Positions 1 to 64,000 of a DNA stretch of 64,000 nt are shown in pieces; position 1 is the stretch's first letter, and the number at the start of each line of letters is the position of its first letter. Under the pieces are notes generated by a model, which was given only the letters and a program-made list of their open reading frames with translations, was not told the DNA's origin and searched no databases. The stretch comes from Octopus sinensis (lineage: Eukaryota): contig NC_042998.1 in the NCBI RefSeq assembly GCF_006345805.1, forward strand, positions 79,484,001 to 79,548,000, given 5' to 3'. The translations under genes and the position numbers were made by a program.

Positions 1-475
1 ACATCTGATGCTTCTTATGTCCAGCATTTTTCTCAAGGCACTTACACTCTGTCATGTGTGCACACTGACATTATACATCCAGCAGATAATGCTAGCTTCA
101 TTTCTTTTAAGCCTATGTATGTCCTCTGCAGTCACAGCCCATGTTTCACTGCCGTGTAGTATGGCAGTTTGCATACATGCATCATACAATCTACCTTTCA
201 CTCTGAGTGAGAGGCCCTTTGTCATCAGTAAAGGTTGGAGCTTTCTGAACTTTGCCCAGCCTATTCTTATTCTAGAGGCAATGCTCTCCAAGCATCCACC
301 CTCATTACAGACTTGGTCAAGCAGGTAGAGGAAGCTATCAACTACATCTAGTTTCTCCCCCTGGCATATGATGGAATCAGTTTTCTGAGCATCTGTGGTG
401 TTTATTGCCCCTGTGCATCTGCTGCACACAAAAGCTATCTTCCCAGTTAACCTTCCTTTGATGCTGCTGTACCTC
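1..475 (-). mobile_element. RTE-clade LINE fragment (C-terminal part of the RT ORF), decayed
   Basis: ORF 52..570 contains KLDVVDSFLYL..GGCLESIASRIRIGWAKFRKLQPLLMTKGLSLRVKGRLYDAC..ILHGSETW, the typical post-RT region of RTE elements; homologous to 12190-12968 and 62850-63480 in this window. Confidence 0.9.
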
Positions 476-2273
476 TTATGCATCCCAAGAAAAGTGAATG
501 TTAAAATGACAAGGTTATATATGACCATCATTTTGTTTTTTGCTTCCCGTCTTTCTCCTTCCACACACAACCATGAAGAGAACGTGGCTTACTGATGTGG
601 TATTGTATGCCTTGATGTCCTTTCTGTCAACTAATCTTATCTGTGCTTCAAGTAATCACAATGAAGGTACTGAGCTACAGGATGTATAAAATGTTTTTTT
701 TCTCTTTTCTTACTTGTTCTGCTTCAGAGTCAATTCAGTAATATAAGAATCTGTCTTATGTTTTACTTGTGGTGCAGCATTGTGCAACTTGCACTGATGG
801 AATATAAACTCACAGCTGTTCCCAAAAGGTTGACATGCTATCAACTCAAGTTTCTTGTAACACTTTTATAATGGCAAGATGATAACTATTTTTATCATTT
901 CGGTTACATTTAGACTGGAGGATTAGCAGAATCATTAGAAACAACAGACTGCCTTCCAGTATTTCTTCCCAGTCCTTTACATTCTCAGTTGAAATCCAAA
1001 ATCAACTTTGCTTTTTATCCCTTCCAGGGTCAATAAAAAAAAGTAGCAGTCAAGCACTAGGGTTGATATACTCAACTGTTCTCCTTCCTCCAAATTTCTG
1101 TCCTTGTGCCTATGTTAGAAATATTATTTAGGTTAAATTAGTAGTAGTGAGAGATCATAAGTGTAGAAGAAAAGCCAGCTATGGTAATTTGCTTTGAGCT
1201 TCTTTACGAAGAATGTGACTCATGTGATGATAATCAACCCAAACTGAAATAGTTACATTAATGTTAACTAGAAAAACAACTAGACACCACTCTACTAATA
1301 CTGGCCTGGTTCTTGTTATTTAGCCCAAAATCAGCCTGGATTAAGCAGACCTATAATTAAATGCATTCCAACCAATTTATTTTTTATTTTTATTTTTTTG
1401 AAGTTTGATATGTGATCCAGAATATGCAATATTAAAGATGTCTCTCTCACACGCGTGCATCCATGTATGCATGCGTGCGTGTGTGATTGAGGATGATTTG
1501 TTTGCGGTTTCAAGCAGGTCAAATAGCCAAAGGCCTCCTTGGCTCATACTGGCCTGCGGTGTTATGAAGTGTCATAGTTATGTAGTTTCCATGACACTTT
1601 CACATCCAATTGGATATGAACAGGTGCATCTATATACATTTCCGATATGGAAATAAACAACACTTGAAATATTATATACAGGCATTTGTGTACATGTATC
1701 TGTACATAACATATTGTAACACTACATGTGGCCAGCAAAAAAAAAAAAATTTACAGCTGTAGCAACAATCATAAAAGTCCATTGGAAATAACTTTCCCAC
1801 ATCTGGTCCTGGTTCCTGACAATAAGCTGAAGCATATTGAATAAAATGCATCAACAGGATACACAACAAAATTTTTGTCCTAAATTTATATGCTGTTCAA
1901 GTACTGAAAATTTTCAGAGACAACTATTAAAAGAAGGAATCTGTGCCAATGTTTGTCTAACAGAATTCTGACACTCTGGAAACAAGTTAAAAACGAATGA
2001 CTGGTAAACAGAAGCTTGTTGAGTAAACTCAAATGAGACTAGGTTAAAAATACAAATACGACCTATGAAGAAAAACTAGTATTTAGTATTACTAGTTGTC
2101 TCAGAGAATAGAAATGTAAACGGTTCAGAAAATTTCCAGTATTTGAACAGAGTGTAAATCTAGAGCAAGAATTTTGTTGTGCATCCATTTAGTGATTTAG
2201 TTCTTAGTTCTACAGGATCAGATCTAGGAAGCTTAACTACTGTAGACTAGCACCTATCCAGAGGGAGGATTAG

Positions 2274-22984: not shown

Positions 22985-24225
22985 TGTGGAACAAGGCTGA
23001 AAAGTCCATAGGCTAACAAATGAAGGAGTAGTGGTAGAGCTGCGAAATCTTGCATGCATTAGTTTCAACTTATTAATAAATAACTGCATTGCTTCTTTCC
23101 AGATAATCTCTGTTCAAAGACTTCAAATGTAACTAGTAGTGACTTGTCTTGAAAATAGACAGAATTTGGCATTGCGGTGTTATTAATTATCAGCAGAAAA
23201 AGGTTTTAGCCCCCAAAGACATTCATGCTGACATGACTGGTACATTAAGGGACAACAATCCAGCTTTATCAATAGTGCAAAAGTGGGCAGCTGAATTTGG
23301 GAGGGGAAGGGAGAATCTTGAGGACCCACGGTCAGGATGTCCTGCAACTACCACTACTGAGGAGAATACTGATCATGTTCACCACATGATGATGGATGAC
23401 AAGCAATTAACTATAAATCATACAGCCGATGCTATTAGCATATCCCATGAGGGATTTGAGAATATTGTGCACAATGAACTCAACACAACGAAGGTTTCTG
23501 TTTGGTGGATGCCATGTCTTCTGACACTTCATCAAAAGTGCATTAATTAGATAGCATCACAGGAAAATTTGATATTGTTTCAAGCACATCCAGTTGGTAT
23601 CCTTGAATGTTTCCTAACTCACAATGAGTATTGAGTTCATCACTTTGAGCCAGAGACAAAGTGACAGGGGAAAACCCCCTCTTCACCTGCCAAGATCATT
23701 TTATCTGCAGGGAAGATAAAGAAGATAATTGCCTCAGTTTTTGGGATGCAAAAGGCATTGTTTATTGATTATCTTCAAAAGGGCTACATCAATGGAGAGA
23801 ACTATGCCAATTTATTGAGGCAATTACGAAAGGCTATCAAGACCAAAAGCCCACGTAAACTGACGAAAGGGGTCTTGTTTCATCAGGACAAGGCTCCAGC
23901 TAACAAGTCCTTACTTTCAATGTGCATGATTATAGCTTTGATCATCCTTCGTATTCTCCTGATTTCCACCCATCTGACTATCATCTGATCCCCAATATGA
24001 AAAAAACTATTGGAAACCAGTATTGCAGTGACCATGTCATATCTGCTGTCGATGACTTTTTCACCAACAGGATGAAAGCTTCCCTACCAATGGGATCGAA
24101 GCACTGCAACACCAATAAGATATGTGTGGACGGCAAGGAGGGCTAGGTTGAAAAATAAACCTCGTCTGGTCACATTCCATGAGAGTATCTTGGTCATCCT
24201 ATGAACTTTTCAGCCAATCCTCATA
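22985..24225 (+). mobile_element. Mariner transposon, near full length, inactive
   Basis: TIRs GGCTGAAAAGTCCATAGGCTAAC / GGTCATCCTATGAACTTTTCAGCC; transposase pieces 23149..23550 (KWAAEFGRGRENLEDPRSGCP) and 23746..23988 (LFIDYLQKG..GVLFHQDKAPA), then HPSYSPDFHPSDYHL; stops and frameshifts. Confidence 0.9.
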
Positions 24226-30109: not shown

Positions 30110-30181
30110 CTTTATTTAAAAGCAGCAGAAATATCGCAGAAACTGTTACTCAGTTTCGCGTTCCCGTTCGTCGGATAGTTT
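30110..30181 (-). ncRNA. Degenerate minimal type I hammerhead ribozyme motif in a single Penelope-type terminal repeat arm
   Basis: Minus strand reads aaactat-CCGACGA-a-cg-GGAA-cg-c-GAAA-ctgag-TA-acagttt; diverged homologue of the palindrome arms. Confidence 0.5.
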
Positions 30182-30275
30182 ATATATATATATTTGTATG
30201 TTTATGTATGTATATATATATATAGATATATGCACAGACATATATGAATATATACATACACACATATATACATAC

Positions 30276-30306
<31 letters not shown>

Positions 30307-30566
30307 CACATATATAGACATATATATATACACACACATATATATATACATATATATATTATATACATATATATATATAATATTTACATATAATATATAT
30401 ATATAATCAACAGTATATTGGATAATTGATATCCTATAGTGGGTTACATTCATAACCCCTATCTTACTTTGTACTATATACATATATATATATATTTAAT
30501 ATATATGCATATATATATATAATATATATACACATATGATATATATAATGTATATATACACATATG

Positions 30567-30598
<32 letters not shown>

Positions 30599-30691
30599 TA
30601 CATATAATATATATACACACATATATATAAAATACTTACATATAATATATATTTATACACATATATTATAAAATATATATATATAAATATA

Positions 30692-30847
30692 CTTTATTTT
30701 AAGCAGCAGAAAATTCAACAAAATCTGTTACTCTGAGTTTCTCATTGCTGTTCATCAGACAGTTTTTGCTAGAAAACTGTCTGATGAACGGCAACGAGAA
30801 ACTCAGAGTAACAGATTTTGTTGAATTTTCTGCTGCTTAAAATAAAG
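30692..30847. ncRNA. 156-bp palindrome carrying a minimal type I hammerhead motif on each strand (copy 1)
   Basis: 75-bp arms (2 mismatches) around a 6-nt loop TGCTAG. Plus: aaaactgt-CTGATGA(30781-87)-a-cg-GCAA-cg-a-GAAA-ctcagag-TA|acagattt. Minus: aaaactgt-CTGATGA-a-ca-GCAA-tg-a-GAAA-ctcagag-TA|acagattt. Confidence 0.75.
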
Positions 30848-31464
30848 CATATTACTCTACCACTGGTATTTGAGAACTCTTTTTTCCACCTTGTTTCACA
30901 TTTATGTGTTTACTCCGGTATATATAAATATATACAGATATAATATATATTTATATACATATATAAATATTTACATGTATATAATATATAAATTAATGTA
31001 TAATATATATTATATATAAATAATATATAATATATATTATATACTCCTGTACTCCTTTAGTTGTTTCAGTTATTTGACTGCGGCCATGCTGGAGCACCGC
31101 CTTTAATCGAGCAACTCGACCCCGGGACTTATTCTTTGTAAGCCCAGTACTTATTCTATCGGTCTCTTTTGCCGAACCGCTAGGTGACGGGGACATAAAC
31201 ACACCAGCATCGGTTGTCAAGCAATACTAGGGGGACAAACACAGACACACAAACACACATACACATACATATATATATACATATATACGACAGGCTTCTT
31301 TCAGTTTCCATCTACCAAATCCACTCACAAGGCTTTGGTCGGCCCGAGGCTATAGTAGAAGACACTTGCCCAAGATGCCACGCAGTGGGACTGAACCCGG
31401 AACCATGTGGTTGGTAAACAAGCTACTTACCACACAGCCACTCCTGTGCCTATATGTATACATA

Positions 31465-31501
<37 letters not shown>

Positions 31502-31888
31502 TATATATATATATTTATATATATATATATATAAATATATATAAATGTATATTTATATAAATATATACATATATATATATATACATATTTACATATACAT
31601 ATATATATATAATCAACAGTATATTGGATAATTGATATCCTATAGTGGGTTACATTCATAACCCCTATCTTACTTTGTACTATATACATATATATATATA
31701 TTTAATATATATGCATATATATAATATATATACACATATGATATATATAATGTATATATACACATATGATATATATATATATATATATATATAAATAATA
31801 TATAATATATATACACACATATATATAAAATACTTACATATATATATATTTATACACATATATTATAAAATATATATATATAAATATA

Positions 31889-32044
31889 CTTTATTTTAAG
31901 CAGCAGAAAATTCAACAAAATCTGTTACTCTGAGTTTCTCATTGCTGTTCATCAGACAGTTTTTGCTAGAAAACTGTCTGATGAACGGCAACGAGAAACT
32001 CAGAGTAACAGATTTTGTTGAATTTTCTGCTGCTTAAAATAAAG
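31889..32044. ncRNA. Hammerhead palindrome copy 2
   Basis: Identical to copy 1, offset 1197 bp. Confidence 0.75.
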
Positions 32045-32885
32045 CATATTACTCTACCACTGGTATTTGAGAACTCTTTTTTCCACCTTGTTTCACATTT
32101 ATGTGTTTACTCCGGTATATATAAATATATACAGATATAATATATATTTATATACATATATAAATATTTACATGTATATAATATATAAATTAATGTATAA
32201 TATATATATATATAAATAATATATAATATATATTATATACTCCTGTACTCCTTTAGTTGTTTCAGTTATTTGACTGCGGCCATGCTGGAGCACCGCCTTT
32301 AATCGAGCAACTCGACCCCGGGACTTATTCTTTGTAAGCCCAGTACTTATTCTATCGGTCTCTTTTGCCGAACCGCTAGGTGACGGGGACATAAACACAC
32401 CAGCATCGGTTGTCAAGCAATACTAGGGGGACAAACACAGACACACAAACACACATACACATACATATATATATACATATATACGACAGGCTTCTTTCAG
32501 TTTCCATCTACCAAATCCACTCACAAGGCTTTGGTCGGCCCGAGGCTATAGTAGAAGACACTTGCCCAAGATGCCACGCAGTGGGACTGAACCCGGAACC
32601 ATGTGGTTGGTAAACAAGCTACTTACCACACAGCCACTCCTGTGCCTATATGTATACATATATATTTATATAAATATATACATATATATATTTATATATA
32701 TATATATGAATATTTACATATATATAAATATATATAAATGTATATTTATATAAATATATACATATATATATTATATATATATATATAATATTTACATATA
32801 ATATATATACACACATATATATAAAATACTTACATATAATATATATTTATACACATATATTATAAAATATATATATATAAATATA

Positions 32886-33040
32886 CTTTATTTTAAGCAG
32901 CAGAAAATTCAACAAAATCTGTTACTCTGAGTTTCTCATTGCTGTTCATCAGACAGTTTTTGCTAGAAAACTGTCTGATGAACGGCAACGAGAACTCAGA
33001 GTAACAGATTTTGTTGAATTTTCTGCTGCTTAAAATAAAG
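32886..33040. ncRNA. Hammerhead palindrome copy 3 (plus-strand GAAA reduced to GAA)
   Basis: Offset 997 bp from copy 2; one A missing at 32992-32994; minus-strand motif intact. Confidence 0.7.
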
Positions 33041-34499
33041 CATATTACTCTACCACTGGTATTTGAGAACTCTTTTTTCCACCTTGTTTCACATTTATGT
33101 GTTTACTCCGGTATATATAAATATATACATATATATATATATTTATATACATATATAAATATTTACATGTATATAATATATAAATTAATGTATAATATAT
33201 ATTATATATAAATAATATATAATATATATTATATACTCCTGTACTCCTTTAGTTGTTTCAGTTATTTGACTGCGGCCATGCTGGAGCACCGCCTTTAATC
33301 GAGCAACTCGACCCCGGGACTTATTCTTTGTAAGCCCAGTACTTATTCTATCGGTCTCTTTTGCCGAACCGCTAGGTGACGGGGACATAAACACACCAGC
33401 ATCGGTTGTCAAGCAATGCTAGGGGGACAAACACAGACACACAAACACACATACACATACATATATATATATATACATATATACGACAGGCTTCTTTCAG
33501 TTTCCATCTACCAAATCCACTCACAAGGCTTTGGTCGGCCCGAGGCTATAGTAGAAGACACTTGCCCAAGATGCCACGCAGTGGGACTGAACCCGGAACC
33601 ATGTGGTTGGTAAACAAGCTACTTACCACACAGCCACTCCTGTGCCTATATGTATACATATATATATATATAAATAATATATAATATATATTATATACTC
33701 CTGTACTCCTTTAGTTGTTTCAGTTATTTGACTGCGGCCATGCTGGAGCACCGCCTTTAATCGAGCAACTCGACCCCGGGACTTATTCTTTGTAAGCCCA
33801 GTACTTATTCTATCGGTCTCTTTTGCCGAACCGCTAGGTGACGGGGACATAAACACACCAGCATCGGTTGTCAAGCAATACTAGGGGGACAAACACAGAC
33901 ACACAAACACACATACACATACATATATATATACATATATACGACAGGCTTCTTTCAGTTTCCATCTACCAAATCCACTCACAAGGCTTTGGTCGGCCCG
34001 AGGCTATAGTAGAAGACACTTGCCCAAGATGCCACGCAGTGGGACTGAACCCGGAACCATGTGGTTGGTAAACAAGCTACTTACCACACAGCCACTCCTG
34101 TGCCTATATGTATACATATATATTTATATAAATATATACATATATATATTTATATATATATATATGAATATTTACATATATATAAATATATATAAATGTA
34201 TATTTATATAAATATATACATATATATATTTATATATATATATATATGAATATTTACATATATATAAATATATATAAATGTATATATATATAAATATATA
34301 CATATATAATATAGATATATACATATATAAATATTTACATTTATATATAATATATATATATACATATATATATAAATATATAGGAAATGTATCAGGACAT
34401 GAAATGTAAAAGCCGAACTAGACTACTTTATGCGCAACTCCATTGTCTCCCAAGACAAAAAGGATGCCAACATACATATACATACATATATACATATAT

Positions 34500-34713
34500 A
34501 ACAACACAGCTCCCATGACTTTCGGAAACATTTTTTCACGCTCAGAGTTGCTGAAGCATGGAATAAACTGCCTGCGTCAGTTGTTGACTGCCATGACACT
34601 GCATCCTTTAAGGCCCTCATGCTTTCCGAAATCCGCCGAAACTACACCTGATTATATATACACTTTAGATGAGTTGTAGTGCACCTGAGCACTGTACACA
34701 ATTATTATTATTA
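34500..34713 (+). mobile_element. CR1/L2-type LINE 3' end
   Basis: Reads HDFRKHFFTLRVAEAWNKLPASVVDCHDTASFKALML..*, followed by an (ATT)n tail. Confidence 0.75.
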
Positions 34714-34747
34714 TAAATATTTACATATATATAATATATATATGTGT

Positions 34748-34794
<47 letters not shown>

Positions 34795-35080
34795 TTATAT
34801 AAATATTTACATATATATAATATGTATGTACATATATATATATATAATATATATACACTTATACATATATATACACACAAACACACACAAATATATATAT
34901 ATATATTAGAAACTTTGGAGATGATGCACAGGTATTTTATATTAGAAGAAATGAGGTACTCAGAAATTCGGATGGTTCATATTTACAGATATTTATTTAT
35001 ATATTATATGTTTTTATACATCATATATTAGCGCTTTCGTCCATTCTGGTGGATTTTTGAAATGGAACCAAGTTCCTGTG

Positions 35081-53929: not shown

Positions 53930-55375
53930 AGGGACACAATTCAAAGAGTGGAAAAATAATTTTTTCCCACATCTTCCATCTGCATTGCAACCTGCTGCCC
54001 ATGGACCAATGTTTCAGTTCCATCATCACCAGGAAACCTTAAAGGCATAAGCTTGGGTTCTGAGTCAGAAGACTTCAATAGCAGTGAAGGTGAAGAAACT
54101 TAACTATTCAACCAATGTGAATTAAATGATCTAGTGAAGAACTTAGGGCTTACAAAGGATTCAGCAGAGCTTTTAGGTTCTAGACTTAAATCCAAGGATC
54201 TTTGAGCACCTCGTACATCATTCTATTGGTTTTGTAACAATGAAAGAGAATTCATTCTTTTTTCACTTAAGAAAATTATTTGGTTTATTGTGCAGATCCA
54301 TCAGGACAAATAAGAACATTTGGCATAAGTTACAGCCCTGATTAATGGAGACGCTTCAACAACTTTTCAAAGAGAAGTCTTAAAGCTCTTCAACTCTAGC
54401 CTTGTTGGACACTCAGTGATCATGAAGGAAACATGAAAATTTGATGTAAGTCTTCACAAGATTAAATTCAAAGATCACAACTGGATGATAAAAATGGCCA
54501 AGTAGGGATATGCTTAAATTTGGAAGAAAGAATATCCTCCTCTACATAGAAAACTTGGCCCCATGAAGCAATTCATAAAAGCTTTGCTACAGGATGGAGA
54601 GGGTTTAAAATATTTGCATAGCAGGTTTCGTGCTCTATCAGACGCTATGGTTGAAGAGGGTGTATTTGTAGAACCAGATATAAGGAAACTTGTCGAGGAT
54701 GAACATTTTCAAAACTCCCATAGTGAGCCTGAAAAAGATGCATGGGTTAATTTTAAAGATGTTATGAAGAACTTCTTGGGTAATCACAAGGATCCAAACT
54801 ACAAAGATATAGGGGCAAGAATGCTGGAAAATTTTGAGGCCTCAGGATGCAAAATAAGCATTAAAGTTAATTTCCTACATGCCCATTTGTATTTCGTTCC
54901 AGAAAATCTGTGGGGTGTGAGTGAAGAGCAAGGGGAAATGTTTCATCAAGGACATAAAAAGAGAAGGAAAGAACATATCAGGGAAGATGGAATGTCAATG
55001 TGATGGCTGACTACTGCTGGATGATGCAGTGTGAATGTCCATCAAATGCACACAAGTCAAAGAATTCCAGGCATAGTTTCCAAGCGAAAAAAAAATTTCA
55101 AGGTGCTGAATAGATAAAAAACAAATGGAACTCTTTTAGAAATCTATTTTCTCATGTTTCAATTATATTTGTACCATAGTATTTTGCTAAATAAAATATG
55201 AAATTCATTTTTATTAGTTTCATTTTGACCTACCATTTGTAGATTTACCTGTTTTATCATTAAATTGTGAGAAAACCTTATGTAATGGGAAAGAGCTTTT
55301 TTTGATATTTCCGATTAGCACCACAAAGTAACATGCAATTATCAAAAAATTCAATTTCATTGACCATTGTAATTA
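53930..55375 (+). mobile_element. Decayed DDE DNA transposase, probably CMC/Chapaev-like (superfamily uncertain)
   Basis: Fragments LFNQCELNDLVKNLGLTKDSAELLGSRLKSKDL and ORF 54563..55003 (MKQFIKAL..FKDVMKNFLGNHK..KVNFLHAHL..VSEEQGEMFHQ), then MADYCW in another frame; many stops and frameshifts. Confidence 0.65.
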
Positions 55376-55476
55376 ACGCTGAGTCATTGAAATAGTGTTT
55401 TTAATGAAAAACCAGAACAAAAAGCTTTCCAAAAACTTTTTTTCTTTATTATCATTATTTTTCTTTACAAATATCA

Positions 55477-56264
55477 TTACTTCCCAAGACTCAAACCTCC
55501 ATCAAAAGGAATGGTAGCACCAGTGAGAAAACTTGCTTTAGGAGAACATAAATATGAAATAAAATCTCCTACTTCTTCAGGTTGACCCCATCGACCCATT
55601 GGAGTTCTTACACATCCAATATCAGGACCCAGTTTTGCCTCCAGTTGTTTCCATGGTTTCGTGTGTATATACCCAGGAACAATACAATTACAAGTGATTC
55701 TCCGCTTTGCTAGCATTTTAGCATAATGACGAGACAAATACTCAAGTACACATTTCCCAGTGCCTGGCATCATGTAACCTAATCGAGTTTGATCATTGAT
55801 ATTACAACCAGGGCTTGATAAGCAAACAATGTAGCCATAACCATCTTCCATTAACTTCATTCCTGTTTCTACTAAACGTATGAAACACTTAGGATAGATG
55901 TTCTGGAAATAATCATACGTTTCAAATGTAGTGAAATGGGTATCTGGATTTTTTGAAACGGAATCTGGTGTATAAAGTCCAGCAGTGTGAACAATCGCAG
56001 TGAGCGTGCCATTCATTTCATTCAAACATTTGAAATATGAATTCACAGTGTCTTCTCCACAAACATCTCCACCAATTGTCCTAACCTGGATCTTGAAATC
56101 CGTCTTTAATTCCTGTTCACACTTCTTGGCATTTTCACTGTCAGAATAGTAACCAAGAATTAAATTATAACCTTGGGCAGCAAGACCTTTGGAAGTAGCA
56201 AAACCTATGCCACCTGTTCCTCCGGTAACTATGGCAATTTTTTGCCGGTCTTCAATCTTTTGAT
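55477..56264 (-). CDS. Short-chain dehydrogenase/reductase, enoyl-ACP-reductase-like (FabL/FabI-type Y-x6-K active site); large terminal exon, first exon not located
   Basis: Intact frame with TGGTGGIG Rossmann motif, HTAG, LSSPG, YMMPGTGK, PGYIHT and TPMGRWGQPEEV..FLTGATIPFDGG. No in-frame ATG before the Rossmann fold (upstream in-frame TGA), but a pyrimidine-rich ttctag acceptor ends at 56265 (phase 1). TAA at 55477-79 and AATAAA at 55445-55450 (minus). Confidence 0.9.
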
Positions 56265-56391
56265 CTAGAATATACAAAAGACAAACATGTAAAATTCACA
56301 AATTATAATTATGTTTATATATTTATGAAAACAAAAATACTTTTTAAAAATATGTAGTAAATATTTTAATTACTTACACATATATACAAAA

Positions 56392-57620
56392 TATTGGGTC
56401 AACCCATAAATAATGTGGGTTTTTTATACTTCTTTTATTTTTCAAAATTAAGATAAATAAGGTTCTTTTTTAATCTAAAATATACTCTCCATTTTCTACA
56501 ATGCTCTTCCATCTATCTGGTAGACTTGCAAGGCCCTGCTTCCAAAATTCACTTGTCCATGACAAAAAATGCTCCTCCAGTACTGTTTTGACCTCGTCAA
56601 CAGAATTCATATATCTTCCGGCCAAATTATCTTGAAGACTGTGGAATAAATGGTAATCAGATGGGGCAATGTCCAGTGAATATGGTGGGTGGGGCATCAT
56701 TTCCTATTCAGATTGCTCCAACCTTTATGTGTATGTGGCTGAGCATTACCCTAATGGAAGAACACCTTTCATCTAGAAACCAAAGAAGGTCATTTTTCTT
56801 CTAGCACTCCCAGTAGATGTCTTTTGTTATCATTTGGTTTGGGTTTAAAAGTTCCAAGTGGACTAAACCTTTCATATCTCACCAAACAGACAACAACACC
56901 TTATGTGGGTGAAGACTTTCTTTAGCCTAGGGTGCCGATGTTTCTCCTTTCCCTACCCACTGTCTTCGGTGCTTGACATTTTTATAGAGAGCCCATTTCT
57001 TGCCACCAGTCACTATTCAGTCCAAAAAAGGTTCATTTGTGGGATGTGACAGTAAAGAAGAGCATAAATTCACTCTCTGCACATGATTACACTTGGAAAG
57101 TTTGTAAGGAACCCACTAACCCAATTTGCTGACTTTTCCAATGGCATACAGGTGTCGATGAAAGGTTGAATGACCAAATCCATGCTTCTCAGCTAGTTCC
57201 TCGTTATTACAATGGGATTTTGTTCCCCTAGGGTCTCCAGGGCATCCTCATCAAGCTCTACAGATCTTCCAGGACAAGACTCATCTAGGCTGTAGTTTCC
57301 AGCTTGAAATTTCTGGAACCACCATTGACACTGGCTTACGCATATTGTCTGATCCCCATACACTGCATTAATATTCCTCACACTTTCCATTGTGTTGTTG
57401 TCTTTATTGAACTCATAAAGCAAAATATGTTGAATATATTCCTTTGTCATTTTCATAATAACATCGAAAAAAATAACTGTTAAAATAGAACTGCACTCTT
57501 CAAAGGTAAAATTACTACCTGCTTTTATAGCAAGTTGATGCAGGTAGTTTATCCCATCTGCATCCAACTTTTAGTTCATGCAATTGTAAAAAAAAACATT
57601 ATTTATGGGATGACCCAATA
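56392..57620 (-). mobile_element. Mariner transposon, near full length, inactive
   Basis: TA-flanked TIRs TTGGGTCAACCCATAAATAATG / CATTATTTATGGGATGACCCAA; transposase pieces 57193..57567 (HILLYEFNK..CQWWFQKFQAGNYSLDE..GRS) and 56470..56700 (PHPPYSLDIAPSDYHLFHSLQ). Confidence 0.92.
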
Positions 57621-59298
57621 AAAAGCAATCACAGTTGATGGGAATGACCACCTGGCGGTGGATGGCATGCATTTGATAAATTTAATACAGAATGGGCTGT
57701 TCACACACACACACGTGTGCATACACACATACACATGCACATACATGCACCATCTATTACATGCAGTTTATAACTGATCAGAATGTACAGCTGGATTAAA
57801 ACAACTGATGGACTTATTTTGGAACCAAACCAGATTGATGAGTTACATATGACCTAGAAACAGCAAAGCAAAAGCAGTGGATTTTACTTCAAGATTCATA
57901 AACCAAAAAGGGGAACTCAATGCGGTTACTTGAACACCTAAAATTATTAGCCAAACCTGTCTCAAATCCTGCTCTATCATCTTAACAATTGAAAGAAAAA
58001 ATTGGATAACATACATTTGGAAAAAGCCAGAATGGTCATGGTTGGAATATATTTGATAATAATAACAACTTAAAACCTTAATAAGGGCTCTCTTACAAAA
58101 CAGTAACAACAGCTTTTGTTTTTATCGTTTTGTTTTGGTTAATATATTGTGATAATTTATGAACCAAGGGAGATTTGACTCCTTTTTGCATTGAGTTTCA
58201 TAACCTTTTAGAGGCCTCCTTTGTGGATTGATGCATACATATGTATAAACATAGTTTTCACGAACAAGTAGAGTGTAATTTAAGGGAGATTTTGCTGTTA
58301 GATCTCTGAGGTTTAACTGTCCTGTAGAGATCTCCATTGTTGGCTCATGCATACATACATACATGAGACAGCAGAAATTGAACTGAAATAGATACAGCTT
58401 CTATTTTGAACATACCACATGACCTCAGACTTACAATATTGATGACAACAATGTTATTGTGAAGATCAATTTGAGTGGGTTAAGTTGTCCCAGTTACATT
58501 TTCAATAAATTTAACCCTACTCTCAATATAGAGTAACACCACCAATAAATGCTCCTTTGTTATTTGAAACTTTATTTTTAATATTACAACAATGTTATGT
58601 ATATTACTAAATCCTGGTAATAAAAGGCATTTCTGTGACCTTGTGGCAATTCTATTGTTTAGTAGGTCACTATGTTTATTATTCAACATGGTCCTTGTTA
58701 TTTAAGACAGCAAGATGTGACATTTGAGTGATTCGCTGCTGTTTCTAGCAGGTTGTGTTGCTACGACTTTTGGCTGCCTTTTGAATATACATGAAGCTTC
58801 TTAAAGCTTTCTCTCCCTCCCTCTCAAAATCTGTCTTGTGTGTGCGTGTGTGTGTGTGCGCGCGCGCGTGTGCGTGTGCATGATGTGAGGGTTATTCAAA
58901 GGTTATTCGTTTTGGAAAACTAAACGATTACTTATTACAAGAATAAAGGGGAAAAAACAATATTAGAAATATTGCAGAAAAGTATCTTTATTCATTGCAT
59001 ATTGTGAGTGAGCCATCATGAATGACTTTCTACTATAAGGCAGAAATGATGCAATTAATCTTGTGTACACAATACAGTTTCAACTAAATAGTTATTGAGA
59101 CTCAATCTGGTTTTGTTTTTGCATGTGCACTGTACAACAGAAACAACAGATTGAATATGTATTGCATATACAAGATGAACAAAAGCATATATTCAATAAA
59201 TACATTTCTGCACAGCGAAGCTTACTGCATGTGCTCAGTAGCCACACAAAGACTAAAATATTGAAATATATATATTATATATATATTATATATATATA

Positions 59299-59414
59299 TA
59301 TATATGAAAGAAGGTTTGAAAATGCAATTTTAAAAGATGTTTATTCACTTGACCAGTTTGACCTGTGAATAAACATCTTTTAAAATTGCATTTTCAAAAC
59401 TTCTTTCATATATA
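59299..59414. repeat. Long inverted repeat (50-bp arms, 16-nt loop)
   Basis: 59299-59348 pairs with 59365-59414 with a single mismatch. Confidence 0.9.
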
Positions 59415-59844
59415 ATTCCACTCGTGCGGTACCTTACAACTTCATTTTGTTATACATACATCATCATCATCATCGTCGTTTAGCGTCCGTTTTCCATGCT
59501 AGCATGGGTTGGACGTTTCTACTGGGGTCTGTGAAGCCAGAAGGCTCATCAGGCCCAGTCAAATCTGGCAGTGTTCTACGGCTGGATGCCCTTCCTAACG
59601 CCAACCACTCCGTGAGTGTAGTGGGTGCTTTTTACGTGCCACCCGCACAGGTGCCAGACAGAGCTGGCAAACGGCCACGAACGGATGGTGCTTTTATGTG
59701 CCACCAGCACAAGGGCCAGGCGAGGCTGGCAACGGACACGAAACGGGGCAGTGCTGGCAATGGTCGCGAAACGGAAGGTTCTCTTACATGCCACCGGCAC
59801 TGGTAACACATCTGCAATTTCCATTGATCGATTTCCATATTATA

Positions 59845-61050
59845 TCATCATCATCATTTAACGTCCGCTTTCCATGCTAGCATGGGTTGGACGGTTCAAC
59901 TGGGGTCTGGGAGCCAAAGCTGCACCAGTCCAGTCAGATCTGGCATGTTTTTCTACAGCTGGATGCCCTTCCTAACGCCAACCACTCCGAGAGTGTAGTG
60001 GGTGATTTTATGTGCCACCGACACAGGTGCCAGACGAGGCTGGCAACGGCCACGCTCGGATGGTGTTTTTTATGTGCCACCGACACAGGTGCCAGACGAG
60101 GCTGGCAGACGGCCACGCTCGATGTGTTTTTATGTGCCACCGACACAGGTGCCAGACGAGGCTGGCAGACGGCCACGCTCGATGGTGTTTTTATGTGCCA
60201 CCGACACAGGTGCCAGACGAGGCTGGCAGACGGCCACGCTCGGATGGTGTTTTTATGTGCCACCGACACAGGTGCCAGATGAGGCTGGCAAACGGCCACG
60301 ATCGATGGTGCTGTTACGTGCCCACAGCACGGAGGCCAGTCGATGCGGTACTGGCTACGGCCACTTCGGATGGTTTTCTTATGTGCCACGTGCCACCGGC
60401 ACTGGTACCACAAAGATACAAATTCCATTGATGTTCATCTATTTTGATTTGTTTTGATTTTCACTTGCCTCAACAGTCTTCACAAGTGTCACAAGAAGGA
60501 AGGTACACAGGTGGACTGACTATGTCCCAGGTAGGGGCCATGGGTTATGGCCTGACTAGTCTTGCCGGGTCTTCGGAGGTGTTTTTTTATGTGCCACCGA
60601 CACAGGTGCTAGATGAGGCTGGCGAACGGCCACGATCGGATGGTGTTTGTCATGTGCCCACCGCACTGACTACGGCACTGATGGATTTCTTGTGGCCACA
60701 GGCACTGGTACCACAAGATACAAATTCCATTGATGTTCATCTATTTTGTCTATTTTGATTTGATTTGATTTTCACTTGCCTCAACCGGTCTTCACAAGTG
60801 TCACAAGAAGGAGGTATGCACAGTGGACTGACTAGTCTTGCCGGGTCTTCGGAAGGTGTTTTTTATGTGCCACCGACACAGGTGCCAGATGAGGCTGGCG
60901 AACGGCCATGATCGGATGGTGTTTTTACGTGCCCACAGCACGGAGGCCGGTCGATGCGGAACTGGCTACGGCCACGTTCGGATGGTTCTTTTGTGTCCCC
61001 GGCACTGGTACCACAAAGATACAGATTCCATTGATGTTCATCTATTTTGA
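59845..61050 (-). mobile_element. RTE 3' UTR copy with internally amplified ~60-bp hairpin repeats and block duplications
   Basis: (TCA)n tail at ~59845; five ~60-62 bp tandem units at 60006-60305; the block ggcactggtaccacaa..aattccattgatgttcatctattttg recurs at ~60400, ~60700 and ~61000. Confidence 0.85.
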
Positions 61051-61749
61051 TTTGTTTTGATATATATATATATATATATATACACAGACACATATCTATA
61101 TTTAAAAAGTTCAACTGAAATCAAGTCAAAATCAAAATCCAATGGACATACACATATAGATTCTTTTACTTAGACTGCAGTCGTGCTGAGACAATACTTT
61201 GAAGGGTTTCATTAAAAAAAAACCCAACCCTAATACATATTTTTGTAAGTCTTGTAATTATTTTATCATTTTCTTTTGCTGAACTACTAAGTTATAGGGA
61301 CATATAAAAAAAAAACAGCATCAATAGTCAAGTGGTGATGGAGGACAAACACACACACACACACAACAGAATAAATAATTTTCAAGAAAATGTGAAATAA
61401 TTCTTTTTTGGAGAGGCAGAGCTAAGCACTTAAAGGTATAAATATTAGCACATAACGTTGATTTAAAAAAAAACCATTGGATAGAAAAGTTGACACACAT
61501 GATGAGCTTCTTGCAGTTTCTGTCCACCAAATTCACTCACAAGGCATTGGTTGGTCTGAGACTATTGTAGAAGACACATGCCAAAGATGCTGCACAGTGG
61601 AACTGAACCCAAGACCACATGGTTGCAAAGCAAACCTCTTAACCACACAGCCATACCTACACCTAATATCTCTGCATTGAAAGGAATGTTATATTTGAGA
61701 ATGAATTTGTAAAGTCACAAACATATGCTTAATAAACATAGGAGAGAAA

Positions 61750-63926
61750 TGTGTCTGCATGGATGACGGTGCACCTGCTTTTAATGATTCTGCAAAGAAA
61801 GAAGCTTGGAGAAGCCATTATGAAAGGCTGCTGAATGTGGAGAATGAATGGGAAAGGGACCAGATACATGAATTGATAGCACCATGGTAAGATAAAGCAA
61901 TTAAGGATATGAAGTCAGGAAAAGCCCCCGGCCCATCAGGAATCACTGCTAGGATGCTTAAAATATCTGGTGGTGTAGGATATGGTCTAGTCATCCATAT
62001 TGTAAACTAGGTACTTCATGAAGGAGTCATACTCAATGAGTGGCATAGCAGCACCATTAGTCAACTGCTACAAAGGTGATGCTTTAATAAAAATAACTAC
62101 AGGGTATCAAACTGCTGGATCAGGTGATAAAGGTCACAGAGTAGGTCATAGCCAAACTAATTAGGAAGGGAGTATGCTTAGATGAGATGCAGTTTGGTTT
62201 TGTGCCAGGTAGAAGCACCACTGATGCTATATTCCTGGTAAGGCAACTGCAGGAGAAATACCTAGCCAAAGATAAACCCCTATACTTGGCTTTTGTTGAC
62301 TTGGACAGGGTCCCCTGATCCCTTATCTGGTGGGTGATGCAGAAACTAGGGATTAACGAGTAGTTAATAAGAGCTGTACAGGGATGCTGTTAGCAAAGTA
62401 AGGGTCAGCAATGAGTATAGTGAAGAATTCCGGGTAGAAGAAGGGGTTCACCAAGAATCAGCCCTCAACCCCCTTTTATTCATCATAGTCTTCCAGGCAA
62501 TAACAGAGGAATTCAAGACAGGTTGCCCCTGGGTGCTCCTCTATGCTGATGACCTTGTTCTCATAGCAGAATCGCTATCAGAACTAGAGAATAAAAATTG
62601 TGGAAGCAAGGTTTAGAATCAAAGGGCCTTAGAGTCAGTGTTGCAAAAACCAAAGTCCTAGTAAGTAGGAAGGCAAACACATCACAAATCCTTTCGGGTA
62701 GATGGCCCTGCTTGATCTGTAGAAAAGGTGTAGTTAGAAACTCTGTACCCAGTGTAAGCTATGGACGCATAAGAGGTGCAGCAACATCTAAGGAAGGTTA
62801 ACCAGGATGATAGCTTTTGTGTGCAGCAGATGCACAGGGGCAATAAACGCTGCAGATGCTCAGAAAACAGATTCCATTACATGGTAAGGGAAGAAACTAG
62901 AAATAGTTGATAGCTTACACTACCAAGGTGATCAAGTCTGTAATGGGGGTGGATGCTTGGAGAGCATTGCCACTAGAATAAGAATGGTCTGGGCAAAGTT
63001 CAGAAAGCTCCTACCTCTACTGGTGACAAAGGGCCTCTCACTCAGAGTGAAAGGTAGATTGTACGATGCATGTGTGTGAACTGCCATACTACACGGCAGT
63101 GAAACATGGGCCATGAATGCTGAAGACAAGCGTAGGCTTGAAAGAAATGACGCTAGTATGATCCACTGGATGTGTAATGTCAGTATGCACACACAACAGA
63201 GTGTAAGCACCCCAAGAGAAATGTTGGACATAAGAAGCATCAGATGTGTGCAACAGAGACAACTGCACTGGTATGGTCATGTACTGCGGATGGATGAGGA
63301 GAGCTGTGTGAAGAAGTGTCACTCTCTAACAGTGGAAAGAACTTGTAGAGGGAGACCCAGGAAGACATGGGATGAGGTGGTGAAGCATGACCTTCGAACA
63401 TTGGGCTTCACAGAACCAGTGACGAAAGACAGAGACCGCTGGAGATATGCTGTGATTGAGAAGATCCTGCAAGTAAAGTGAGATCACAGCTGTAGCCTAT
63501 ACCAGTGTCGCATAAAAAGCCCATTTCAAAAGTAACTTTGAATTGTTGGGCAACACGCCGTGCTTGATGAGACCTATTGTGTCAAGTAAAATCAAAAATC
63601 AAATCACAATTGAAAATGGAAATTGTAGTTGTGGCTGATGCCAGTGCCACCTGACTGGCTCCCATGCTGGTGGCATGCAATAAGCACCATTCATGCATGG
63701 GTCATTGCCAGTGCCACCTGACTGGCTCCCTGTACCGGTAGCACATAAAAAGCACCCACTACATTCTCAGAGTGGTTGGCATTAGGAAGGGCATCCAGCT
63801 GTAGAAAGATTGCCAGATCAGATTGGAGCCTGGTGTGGCCTCCTGGCTTGTCAGTCCCCAGACAAACCGTCCAACCCAAGCCAGCATGGAAAACGGATGT
63901 TAAACGGTGATGATGGTGATGATGAT
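61750..63926 (+). mobile_element. 5'-truncated RTE LINE with RT domain, decayed
   Basis: Pieces GKAPGPSGIT, DEMQFGFVPGRSTTDAIFLVRQLQEKYLAK..LYLAFVDL, PWVLLYADDLVL and ORF 63113..63481, then a 3' UTR ending in (GAT)n; frameshifts and stops. Confidence 0.95.
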
Positions 63927-64000
63927 ATTTCATACTCAAGAAGAATCATTCTCTACAGCAAAATTGTTAATGTCACTGCCTCTGCTGAAGAAGATTGGCC

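What the first reader, a model, noticed from the sequence alone, without database searches (positions are those of the whole stretch)
55477..56264. Intron-poor, bacterial-type enoyl-ACP-reductase-like SDR in an animal genome: candidate horizontal acquisition
The catalytic segment LSSPGCNINDQTRLG-YMMPGTGK-CVLE lacks the classical YxxxK (Pro sits where Tyr would be) but has Y-x6-K. This is the spacing of E. coli FabI (YNVMGLAK) and B. subtilis FabL (YTTVGVSK), while the TGxxxGxG N-terminus is FabL/FabG-like. Animals are not known to use stand-alone FabI/FabL (cytosolic FAS and mitochondrial MECR use MDR-fold enoyl reductases). About 262 codons are uninterrupted, unlike the tiny exons of neighbouring genes, yet the gene looks domesticated: AT-rich codons, an obligatory splice acceptor at 56265 and AATAAA ~27 nt after the stop. 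The frame is intact amid wholly decayed neighbours, implying selection. Alternatives are a retrocopy or a divergent eukaryotic SDR (PECR/DECR-like enzymes also lack YxxxK).
Basis: partly seen in the sequence, partly recalled or inferred. Interest (0 to 1): 0.8.

Follow-up and report, generated by a model that had tools for sequence, protein, structure and literature searches.

The report
Octopus FabL-like reductase of microbial type
The open reading frame is a real, selectively maintained octopus gene for a short-chain reductase whose family is otherwise found in cyanobacteria, micro-algae and a few marine invertebrates, so an ancient gene transfer is plausible but not proven and it is not unique to octopus.

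Summary
Window 55477-56264 (-) is the 788-nt last exon of an annotated Octopus sinensis gene (XP_029657088.1, named "FabG isoform X1"). It has a true AG acceptor, an AATAAA 26 nt after the stop, and a 28-nt first exon 15.4 kb upstream, outside the window.

The protein is an SDR with TGGTGGIG, SSPGC and Y173-x6-K180, with Pro where the classical Tyr sits. B. subtilis FabL is its closest solved relative.

It belongs to a compact subfamily. In prokaryotes I found that subfamily only in cyanobacteria (33 of 33 loci). It also occurs in green algae and protists, and patchily in animals: octopods, an unidentified sister group, amphioxus, acorn worms and bdelloid rotifers.

Coding sequences are intronless or nearly so in each animal lineage, and dN/dS is 0.11-0.20. 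NJ trees never group the animals together. Each animal group is closer to cyanobacteria than to other animal groups. However, the cephalopod clade is not nested inside cyanobacteria and the backbone is unresolved.

Verdict: a functional FabL-like reductase of probable foreign (cyanobacterial or algal) ancestry, acquired before octopods diversified. Horizontal transfer is favoured (about 0.6) over ancient inheritance with many losses. The substrate is unknown. It is not a FabL, FabG or FabI orthologue.

The parts
55477..56264 (-). Last (second) coding exon of the SDR gene. It holds the last 2 nt of codon 10, codons 11-271 and the stop codon TAA at 55479-55477.
   Evidence: ORF list. 100% match to RefSeq protein P0001 from residue 10 onward. 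Pfam adh_short_C2, E 1.5e-37.
56265..56285 (-). 3' splice site: AG at 56266-56265, preceded by a pyrimidine-rich tract (ttgtcttttgtatattctag). The intron is phase 1.
   Evidence: Sequence. The junction was deduced from P0001 and locus L011. The same acceptor sequence and phase occur in the paralogue, and the same phase in Argonauta.
56265..64000 (-). 3' part of intron 1, about 15.4 kb in total. Exon 1 (28 nt, MSSQESCVA + G) lies about 7.7 kb beyond the window end.
   Evidence: Mapping of the window onto L011, Octopus sinensis CM016860.1.
55445..55450 (-). AATAAA polyadenylation signal, 26 nt downstream of the stop codon.
   Evidence: Its function is inferred from the consensus only.
56203..56226 (-). 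Dinucleotide-binding motif TGGTGGIG (residues 23-30). Most of the family has TGGTRGIG.
   Evidence: Sequence and family alignment A1.
55753..55821 (-). Active-site segment SSPGCNINDQTRLGYMMPGTGK, with S159, Y173 and K180 (Y-x6-K). Pro176 sits at the position of the classical SDR Tyr.
   Evidence: Alignments to FabL 3oic and FabG 2p68. Y173 is nearly invariant and K180 is invariant across 34 family members. P0001 keeps 52 of the 54 family-conserved positions.

Best explanation
**What it is.** Window 55477-56264 (-) is the main exon of a functional nuclear gene of Octopus sinensis. The gene encodes a soluble NAD(P)H-dependent short-chain reductase with no obvious targeting signal, so it is probably cytosolic.

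**Family.** The protein belongs to a compact SDR subfamily defined by TGGTxGIG, YDYYQxxYPK, SSPGCN and Y-x2-PGxGK (Tyr-x6-Lys). In prokaryotes I found the subfamily only in cyanobacteria. It also occurs in micro-algae and protists.

**Likely history (inferred).**
- An intronless copy entered the cephalopod lineage from a cyanobacterium or alga, before octopods split from the unidentified 60%-identical sister group, which is probably decapodiforms.
- It took on host base composition and lost part of a surface loop.
- In octopods it acquired a short 5' exon, a long phase-1 intron and a poly(A) signal.
- It duplicated within Octopus. The window holds the younger copy.
- It has since evolved under purifying selection.

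**Likely chemistry (inferred by analogy with FabL and FabI).** Hydride passes from NAD(P)H to the beta-carbon of an alpha,beta-unsaturated thioester or carbonyl. Tyr173 stabilises or protonates the enolate, and Lys180 holds the nicotinamide ribose. The natural substrate is unknown. It is more likely a CoA ester or a small enone than acyl-ACP.
For: **Real host gene**
- It lies on a 208-Mb chromosome and shares octopod repeats with the paralogue and Argonauta loci.
- It has a canonical GT...AG intron and GC3 of 28%.
- Orthologues in O. vulgaris and O. bimaculoides are 99.6% and 95.6% identical.

**Selection and integrity**
- dN/dS is 0.18 between the paralogues and 0.11 against Argonauta.
- 52 of 54 family-conserved residues are kept.
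- The AlphaFold model has mean pLDDT 92.8.

**Family and distribution**
- An exhaustive search of 1.84 billion cluster representatives gives only 33 with E <= 1e-30.
- The best non-cephalopod hits are cyanobacteria at 43-50% identity.
- All 33 loci found among 185,579 prokaryote species are cyanobacterial.
- No ordinary animal SDR exceeds about 35% identity.

**Foreign-origin signals**
- The coding sequence is uninterrupted in the sister group (L001) and in amphioxus.
- Single, non-shared introns occur in octopods (residue 9/10) and in Ptychodera (residue 198).
- All-animal monophyly was recovered in 0 of 300 NJ bootstraps.
- Every animal group is closer to cyanobacteria than to the other animal groups.

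**FabL-like chemistry**
- FabL is the top PDB hit for the single sequence.
- For the family profile FabL scores 169.7 bits against 146.1 for the next hit.
- Y-x6-K aligns to the Y and K of FabL.
Against: - The cephalopod clade is not nested within cyanobacteria. Cyanobacteria are monophyletic at 99% without it, and its sister group is unresolved.
- Only distance (NJ) trees could be built.
- The family is broadly present in eukaryotic microbes and in three other animal lineages. An old eukaryotic gene with many losses therefore remains possible.
- 161 of the 281 profile hits were not listed, so further animals may carry it.
- Expression in Octopus was not verified here. No Logan transcript encodes exactly P0001.
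- Scores are far below the curated FabL cut-off (104.9 against 328 bits).
- Fold comparison does not separate FabL from ketoreductases.
- Cyanobacterial neighbourhoods contain no fatty-acid-synthesis genes.
- The Arg of TGGTRGIG is replaced in cephalopods, so cofactor preference is unclear.
Confidence: 0.55

Rival explanations
1. Ancient vertical inheritance. The subfamily was present in early eukaryotes or early animals. It has been lost independently in most lineages and survives in cephalopods, amphioxus, acorn worms, rotifers and various protists.
For: The family occurs in green algae, an amoebozoan transcriptome, MMETSP protists, an unidentified eukaryote contig with Ndc80 and MIF4G neighbours, and four animal groups. 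The cephalopod clade is outside the cyanobacterial clade and the backbone is unresolved. Simakov et al. 2015 (PMC4729200) list convergent loss as an alternative for similar microbe-like deuterostome genes.
Against: Animals are never monophyletic in the bootstraps (0 of 300). Rotifers group with Coccomyxa and relatives at 73-91%. Each animal group is more similar to cyanobacteria than to the other animal groups. No intron position is shared between animal lineages, and coding sequences are intronless in amphioxus and the cephalopod sister group. Many independent losses would be needed across vertebrates, tunicates, echinoderms, ecdysozoans, other spiralians, cnidarians and sponges; none of these appeared among the named hits.
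Confidence: 0.28
2. It is an ordinary 3-oxoacyl (keto) reductase, as the RefSeq name 'FabG' says. On this reading the unusual Tyr spacing has no consequence for the chemistry.
For: The top NCBIfam hits by score are FabG and acetoacetyl-CoA reductase subfamily models (121 and 110 bits). It has a classical TGxxxGxG motif and retains Ser159. Foldseek neighbours are mostly keto or alcohol reductases.
Against: All scores are far below the curated cut-offs. Pro occupies the classical catalytic Tyr position, and the only conserved Tyr is 7 residues before the Lys, as in FabL and FabI. With a family profile FabL is clearly the best solved relative. The C=C-reducing SDRs YwfH/BacG and AerF are also among the close folds.
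Confidence: 0.15
3. It is a processed retrocopy of a multi-exon octopus SDR gene.
For: The coding exon is long and uninterrupted and lies in a transposon-rich region.
Against: No candidate parent exists. Apart from its own paralogue, which has the same structure, no animal SDR outside this subfamily exceeds about 35% identity. The same intron is present in the paralogue and in Argonauta.
Confidence: 0.02
4. It is bacterial or algal contamination, or a misassembly in the octopus genome.
For: The nearest relatives by similarity are cyanobacteria.
Against: It lies in a chromosome-scale scaffold between octopod repeats and mariner remnants. It has a spliceosomal intron. It is present at more than 95% identity in three Octopus genome projects and in Argonauta, with a BTB gene nested in the intron of the paralogous and orthologous loci. 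It is only 50% identical to any bacterium.
Confidence: 0.01

Closest known systems
FabL (enoyl-ACP reductase III, Bacillus subtilis YgaA; PDB 3OIC/3OID)
   Same: It combines an SDR fold, a TGxxxGxG N-terminus and a Tyr-x6-Lys catalytic spacing. FabL is the best solved relative, both for the octopus protein (E 6.5e-22) and for the family profile (E 7.7e-49).
   Different: Identity is only about 29%. The score of 104.9 bits is well below the 328-bit cut-off of the FabL equivalog model. The octopus protein has 3 extra residues between the Ser and the Tyr, and its own signature motifs (SSPGCN, YDYYQxxYPK, PGxGK). In cyanobacteria there is no link to fab genes or ACP. The octopus protein has no obvious organelle targeting signal, whereas the free ACP of animal mitochondrial FAS II is in the mitochondrion.
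FabG / acetoacetyl-CoA reductase type classical SDRs (the RefSeq name of this gene)
   Same: Same fold and length, the same glycine motif and a retained Ser.
   Different: The classical YxxxK motif is absent, with Pro at the Tyr position. Scores are 110-121 bits against cut-offs of 269-302.
Microbe-like 'gene novelties' of marine invertebrates (Simakov et al. 2015, Nature; PMC4729200)
   Same: The distribution pattern is the same: readily alignable to cyanobacteria and micro-algae, and absent from most animals. The same two explanations apply, transfer or convergent loss.
   Different: That set was defined as deuterostome-specific. This family also occurs in cephalopods and bdelloid rotifers. 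It is not mentioned in the main text of that paper, nor in the amphioxus novelty preprint.
FabI / InhA ('divergent' SDR enoyl reductases)
   Same: Tyr-x6-Lys spacing, according to established descriptions of FabI.
   Different: The N-terminal motif here is the classical TGxxxGxG, not the divergent type. FabI and InhA are not among the best 60 solved relatives.

Membership tests
SDR superfamily (Pfam adh_short / adh_short_C2) | Score above the Pfam gathering cut-off, and a Rossmann fold with a TGxxxGxG motif | tested here: met
   adh_short_C2 scores 129.9 bits (cut-off 27) and adh_short 85.5 bits (cut-off 26.6). TGGTGGIG is present. The AlphaFold model has pLDDT 92.8 with alternating strands and helices. 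About 2000 SDR structures match it.
FabL (NCBIfam NF005975, equivalog) | Score at or above the curated whole-protein cut-off (328 bits) | tested here: not met
   104.9 bits.
FabL | Tyr-x6-Lys catalytic spacing combined with a classical glycine motif | tested here: met
   Y173 and K180 align with the Y and K of 3oic. Both are conserved across the family.
FabL | NADPH-dependent reduction of enoyl-ACP within type II fatty-acid synthesis | not testable with these tools
   No assay was possible. Cyanobacterial neighbours show no fab or acp genes in 34 loci. The Arg of the glycine motif is replaced by Gly or Ser in cephalopods.
FabG (TIGR01830 and related models) | Score at or above the curated cut-off, and the classical Ser...YxxxK triad | tested here: not met
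   110.2 bits against 297.75, and 121.1 bits against 269. Pro sits at the classical Tyr position in the alignment to 2p68.
FabI / InhA divergent SDR | Divergent N-terminal cofactor motif plus Y-x6-K | tested here: inconclusive
   Y-x6-K is present, but the N-terminus is classical. No FabI or InhA entry is among the best 60 PDB sequence hits. No direct comparison was run.
PECR / DECR-type eukaryotic enoyl and dienoyl reductases | Closer similarity to these than to bacterial SDRs | tested here: not met
   None appears among the best 60 solved relatives of the protein or of the family profile. No named animal PECR or DECR appears among the protein hits.
Horizontally acquired gene in an animal | Physically integrated in the host genome and not a contaminant | tested here: met
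   Chromosome context, host repeats, a spliceosomal intron, and orthologues in four octopod genomes.
Horizontally acquired gene in an animal | Absent from related animals, with best hits outside animals | tested here: inconclusive
   The best non-cephalopod hit is cyanobacterial (277 bits), against amphioxus at 250 bits. The E-values give an alien index of about 24 by my own calculation. The family is absent from all other named animals in the lists, but present in amphioxus, hemichordates and rotifers. 161 hits were not listed.
Horizontally acquired gene in an animal | Phylogenetic nesting inside a donor clade with support | tested here: not met
   Cyanobacteria are monophyletic at 99% excluding cephalopods. 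The sister group of the cephalopod clade is unresolved. Only NJ trees were built.
Horizontally acquired gene in an animal | Maintained by selection after acquisition | tested here: met
   dN/dS is 0.11-0.20. 52 of 54 conserved positions are kept.

The most novel reading that the evidence does not exclude
The same cyanobacterial or algal FabL-like reductase was captured independently by at least three or four marine or aquatic animal lineages (coleoid cephalopods, amphioxus, acorn worms, bdelloid rotifers). In each it was kept, and often duplicated, under purifying selection. That would be a case of convergent horizontal acquisition. It would point to a shared, still unknown substrate of microbial origin, for example an unsaturated lipid, oxylipin or toxin met in the sea, that animals cannot otherwise reduce.
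Probability: 0.3. Interest if true: 0.75.

Novelty: new member of a known kind. Interest (0 to 1): 0.5.

Why it matters
If the transfer reading is right, this adds cephalopods to the short list of large, complex animals with a functional metabolic gene of cyanobacterial or algal type. No horizontally acquired cephalopod gene turned up in my literature searches.

It would also link cephalopods to amphioxus, acorn worms and bdelloid rotifers through the same enzyme family. That suggests a recurrent selective advantage.

Practically, the RefSeq name 'FabG' is probably misleading. The family is an uncharacterised Tyr-x6-Lys reductase clade with no studied member, so one enzyme assay would annotate several hundred cyanobacterial, algal and animal genes at once.

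If it instead proves to be an old eukaryotic gene with heavy loss, it is an ordinary orphan SDR of modest interest.

Tried and rejected
1. **Second copy or exon 1 in the window.** None found. Exon 1 lies outside the window.
2. **Retrocopy and contamination hypotheses.** Both rejected; see the rival explanations.
3. **Conserved operon in cyanobacteria as a clue to function.** The two loci first inspected differ. Across 34 loci only loose partners recur: a DUF3598/BFA1-like protein in 13, an epimerase-like NAD-binding protein in 10, an unknown 337-aa protein in 9, and a Rieske/PaO oxygenase in 4. No fab genes occur. This is not enough to name a pathway.
4. **Identifying the organism behind the 60%-identical sister sequences (P0004-P0006).**
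   - The flanks of L001 hold only LINE debris.
   - A protein search with that LINE returned only unnamed copies from the same ENA assembly.
   - No sequence is shared with octopod loci beyond the gene itself.
   - Text searches for the run accessions found nothing relevant.
   - The assignment to decapodiform cephalopods therefore remains an inference. It rests on 99.5% bootstrap sisterhood, a shared loop deletion, and dN about twice the Octopus-Argonauta value.
5. **Fold comparison to separate enoyl from keto reductases.** Uninformative, because all SDRs match equally well.
6. **Family-wide alignment as a query for the prokaryote genome scan.** A narrower alignment was used instead, so only close relatives of the cyanobacterial form could be found there.
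7. **Literature searches for a prior report.** None found.
8. **Maximum-likelihood phylogeny.** No program was available, so only NJ with bootstrap was run.

Full report
**1. What is in the sequence**

The minus strand of the window carries an ORF at 55477..56277, 266 codons from an upstream TTG. It is the longest stop-free stretch in the 64-kb window: 272 codons, against 109-161 in 20 shuffles. About 0.0008 such ORFs are expected by chance at 36.6% G+C.

The window is part of Octopus sinensis chromosome CM016860.1, around 79.5 Mb. The ORF is the last exon of an annotated gene, XP_029657088.1, named '3-oxoacyl-[ACP] reductase FabG isoform X1', 271 aa (= P0001).
- Exon 1 (ATGTCGTCGCAAGAATCATGTGTTGCTG|gtaagt) lies about 7.7 kb beyond the window end.
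- The intron is about 15.4 kb and phase 1. It ends at ...ttgtatattctag| with AG at 56266-56265, and exon 2 runs from 56264 to 55477.
- AATAAA sits at 55450-55445, 26 nt after the stop.

The flanks hold decayed mobile elements, including a Mos1-type HTH at 57193-57567 inside the intron. Base composition matches the host: ORF G+C is 38.6% and GC3 is 28%, against 36.6% for the window.

**2. What the protein is**

Pfam places it in the SDR superfamily (adh_short_C2, 1.5e-37). No curated NCBIfam model is reached. The best scores are 121 bits for a FabG subfamily model (cut-off 269) and 104.9 bits for the FabL equivalog (cut-off 328).

The best solved relative is B. subtilis FabL (3oic, 6.5e-22). 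In that alignment Y173-x6-K180 (YMMPGTGK) lines up with FabL's YTTVGVSK. In the alignment to a classical FabG, Pro176 falls on the catalytic Tyr.

With a 34-sequence family profile FabL stands out further: 169.7 bits (7.7e-49), against 146.1 bits for the next entry.

An AlphaFold model is confident (pLDDT 92.8, pTM 0.90). Fold comparison matches all SDRs about equally. FabL is at rank 31, and the C=C-reducing SDRs YwfH and AerF are at ranks 13-14, so the fold does not discriminate.

P0001 keeps 52 of the 54 positions conserved in at least 80% of the family. The two exceptions are Tyr/Phe swaps. One lineage-specific change concerns the usual TGGTRGIG motif. It is TGGTGGIG in octopods and TGGTSGIG in the sister group. 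In classical SDRs that basic residue helps bind the 2'-phosphate of NADPH (established knowledge), so cofactor preference is open.

The N-terminus (MSSQESCVADQKIEDRQK) and C-terminus (SLGK) show no obvious mitochondrial or peroxisomal signal. This is by eye only.

**3. Relatives and distribution**

A word-indexed search gave the following:
- the O. sinensis protein itself;
- a paralogue at 83% identity;
- Argonauta hians at 76%;
- three unnamed proteins at 59-61%;
- sixteen cyanobacterial proteins at 43-50% (E 1e-78 to 1e-56);
- then a drop to generic bacterial SDRs at 35% or less.

An exhaustive HMMER scan of 1.84 billion cluster representatives found only 33 with E <= 1e-30, so this is a compact subfamily.

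Name look-ups and a profile search widened the picture:
- *Octopods.* Both paralogues are present in O. vulgaris and O. bimaculoides at 90% identity or more, and Argonauta has two copies.
- *Other animals.* The family occurs in Branchiostoma floridae, B. lanceolatum and B. belcheri (45-48%). It also occurs in the acorn worms Ptychodera flava and Glandiceps talaboti (40-42%) and in bdelloid rotifers (38-39%).
- *Eukaryotic microbes.* It is present in the green algae Coccomyxa and Micractinium, a Stygamoeba transcriptome, and MMETSP and Tara protists.
- *Cyanobacteria.* Many genera carry it.
- NCBI's pipeline already labels several of the amphioxus and acorn-worm genes 'enoyl-ACP reductase [NADPH] FabL-like'.

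A pattern scan of one genome from each of 185,579 prokaryote species returned 33 loci, all cyanobacterial. They include Crocosphaera, Cyanothece, Trichodesmium, Moorena and many Nostocales. The patterns were narrow, so only close relatives could be found. One further unnamed family member sits as a single ORF on a eukaryotic contig beside Ndc80 and MIF4G gene fragments.

**4. Gene structures**

| Lineage | Coding-sequence structure |
|---|---|
| O. sinensis, window gene and its paralogue (134.4 Mb, same chromosome) | Same acceptor sequence (tattctag) and same phase |
| Argonauta | Phase-1 intron a few codons further upstream |
| Unidentified sister group (L001) | One uninterrupted ORF in AT-rich, LINE-rich DNA |
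| B. floridae | Intronless, tandem pair |
| Ptychodera | One intron at residue 198, beside an intronless divergent copy |

The paralogue and the Argonauta gene each have a BTB-domain gene nested antisense in the long intron. That locus is probably the ancestral one and the window gene the younger duplicate. Consistent with this, dS is 0.47 between the paralogues and 1.2-1.5 against Argonauta.

No intron position is shared between animal phyla.

Sister-group contigs of 1.4-1.8 kb, with UTRs and two alternative 5' ends, occur in at least 17 sequencing runs. More than 100 contigs carry the P0005 cluster. This suggests the gene is expressed there, although whether the runs are RNA-seq could not be checked. 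Expression in Octopus itself could not be checked.

**5. Selection**

Nei-Gojobori dN/dS values are as follows:
- 0.18 between the O. sinensis paralogues;
- 0.11-0.12 against Argonauta;
- 0.20 within the sister group.

**6. Phylogeny**

MAFFT alignment of 100 sequences, 260 trimmed columns, NJ with 200-300 bootstraps.

Clade support:
- octopods plus the unnamed 60% group: 99.5%;
- amphioxus: 100%;
- acorn worms: 100%;
- cyanobacteria, excluding all animals: 99%;
- rotifers with unnamed sequences: 96%;
- that rotifer group together with Coccomyxa: 73%.

The backbone is unresolved. Cephalopod+amphioxus gets 8-16%, cephalopod+cyanobacteria at most 2%, and all animals together 0 of 300.

Mean identities show a hub pattern:
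- Cephalopods are 49.9% identical to cyanobacteria, against 47.2% to amphioxus, 43.9% to acorn worms and 41.8% to rotifers.
- Amphioxus and acorn worms are each 54% identical to cyanobacteria but only 46% to each other.
- Acorn worms also keep the cyanobacterial-type loop (TTPSSDDARVAADEK against TTPTSEEAEAAADKQ), which cephalopods have shortened.

**7. Interpretation**

*Shown:* a real, conserved and constrained octopod gene. It is an SDR of a distinct Tyr-x6-Lys subfamily whose closest characterised relative is FabL, and it has a patchy distribution centred on cyanobacteria and micro-algae.

*Inferred:* an ancient acquisition of an intronless copy by the cephalopod lineage, followed by intron gain and duplication. 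I put this at about 0.6.
- In favour: animals are not monophyletic, the similarity hub is cyanobacterial, no introns are shared, and the family is absent from the other named animals.
- Against: there is no supported nesting in a donor clade, only distance trees were available, the family is broadly present in eukaryotic microbes, and 161 profile hits were not listed.

*Chemistry:* reduction of an activated C=C bond is an analogy with FabL and FabI. I put this at about 0.5.
- An acyl-ACP substrate is unlikely for an untargeted animal protein. In animals free ACP is mitochondrial, and the cytosolic synthase carries its own ACP (established knowledge).
- Cyanobacterial neighbourhoods show no fab genes. 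The loose partners that recur are listed under 'tried and rejected'.

**8. Comparison with what is known, and novelty**

The gene model has been in RefSeq since the O. bimaculoides annotation, so the feature itself is known. My ten text searches found no paper on this family in animals or on horizontally acquired genes in cephalopods.

The pattern matches the microbe-like gene novelties reported for deuterostomes by Simakov et al. 2015 (PMC4729200). They left transfer versus convergent loss open. This family extends that pattern to cephalopods and rotifers.

I rate it a new member of a known kind and of moderate interest. It is not a FabL, FabG or FabI orthologue.

Noticed in passing
window 56470-56700 (-) and 57193-57567 (-): Decayed Mos1/mariner-type transposase remnants inside intron 1 of the SDR gene. 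The second matches Pfam HTH_48 (1.6e-17). The first has the typical 'PHPPYSLDIAPSDYHLF' C-terminal motif, recognised by eye only.
   Followed up: partly
window 54563-55003 (+): A 146-aa ORF about 0.5 kb downstream of the gene, on the opposite strand, with no Pfam match. It looks like the tail of a repeat-encoded protein (...FLHAHLYFVPENLWGVSEEQGE...).
   Followed up: partly
window 60001-60322: A 62-bp tandem repeat, 5.3 copies at 94% match, inside the intron. It produces the spurious overlapping ORFs at 59887-60457.
   Followed up: no
window 30181-34879: A block of (TA)n microsatellites alternating with four or more copies of a ~460-bp element (for example 33188-34156, 2.1 copies at 97%). The same element occurs many times in the paralogue locus L010 and, in part, in Argonauta L009, so it is an abundant octopod interspersed repeat.
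   Followed up: partly
window 52-570 (-) and 23149-23550 (+): Further transposon debris. The first is a LINE reverse-transcriptase C-terminal fragment and the second is a mariner-like N-terminal fragment. Both were recognised by eye only.
   Followed up: no
L010 14249-28760 (-) and L009 24489-33089 (-): A ~600-aa BTB-domain gene lies antisense inside the long first intron of the O. sinensis paralogue and of the Argonauta orthologue. It is conserved nested synteny that the window copy lacks.
   Followed up: partly
L012 3001-3798 and 5932-6729: Branchiostoma floridae carries two intronless family members in tandem, 2.1 kb apart and 94.7% identical. Several further paralogues exist in amphioxus species.
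   Followed up: partly
L013 1758-2642 (-) and 3001-9156 (+): Ptychodera flava has a head-to-head pair of family members. One is intronless (294 aa). The other has a single 5.3-kb intron at residue 198.
   Followed up: partly
L047 8001-8849: An unnamed 282-aa family member is encoded as a single ORF on a eukaryotic contig next to Ndc80 and MIF4G-like gene fragments. Its clade (P0021, P0022, P0346, P0351, P0355) falls near the acorn-worm sequences, and the organism is unknown.
   Followed up: partly
L014-L046 (cyanobacterial loci): The prokaryotic members are all cyanobacterial, and many come from nitrogen-fixing genera (Crocosphaera, Cyanothece, Trichodesmium, Nostocales). A DUF3598/BFA1-like gene sits next to the reductase in 13 of 34 loci.
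   Followed up: partly
L048-L055 (5' ends): Sister-group transcripts have two different 5' UTR sequences joined to the same coding region. This suggests alternative first exons there too, although the coding sequence itself is uninterrupted in L001.
   Followed up: no
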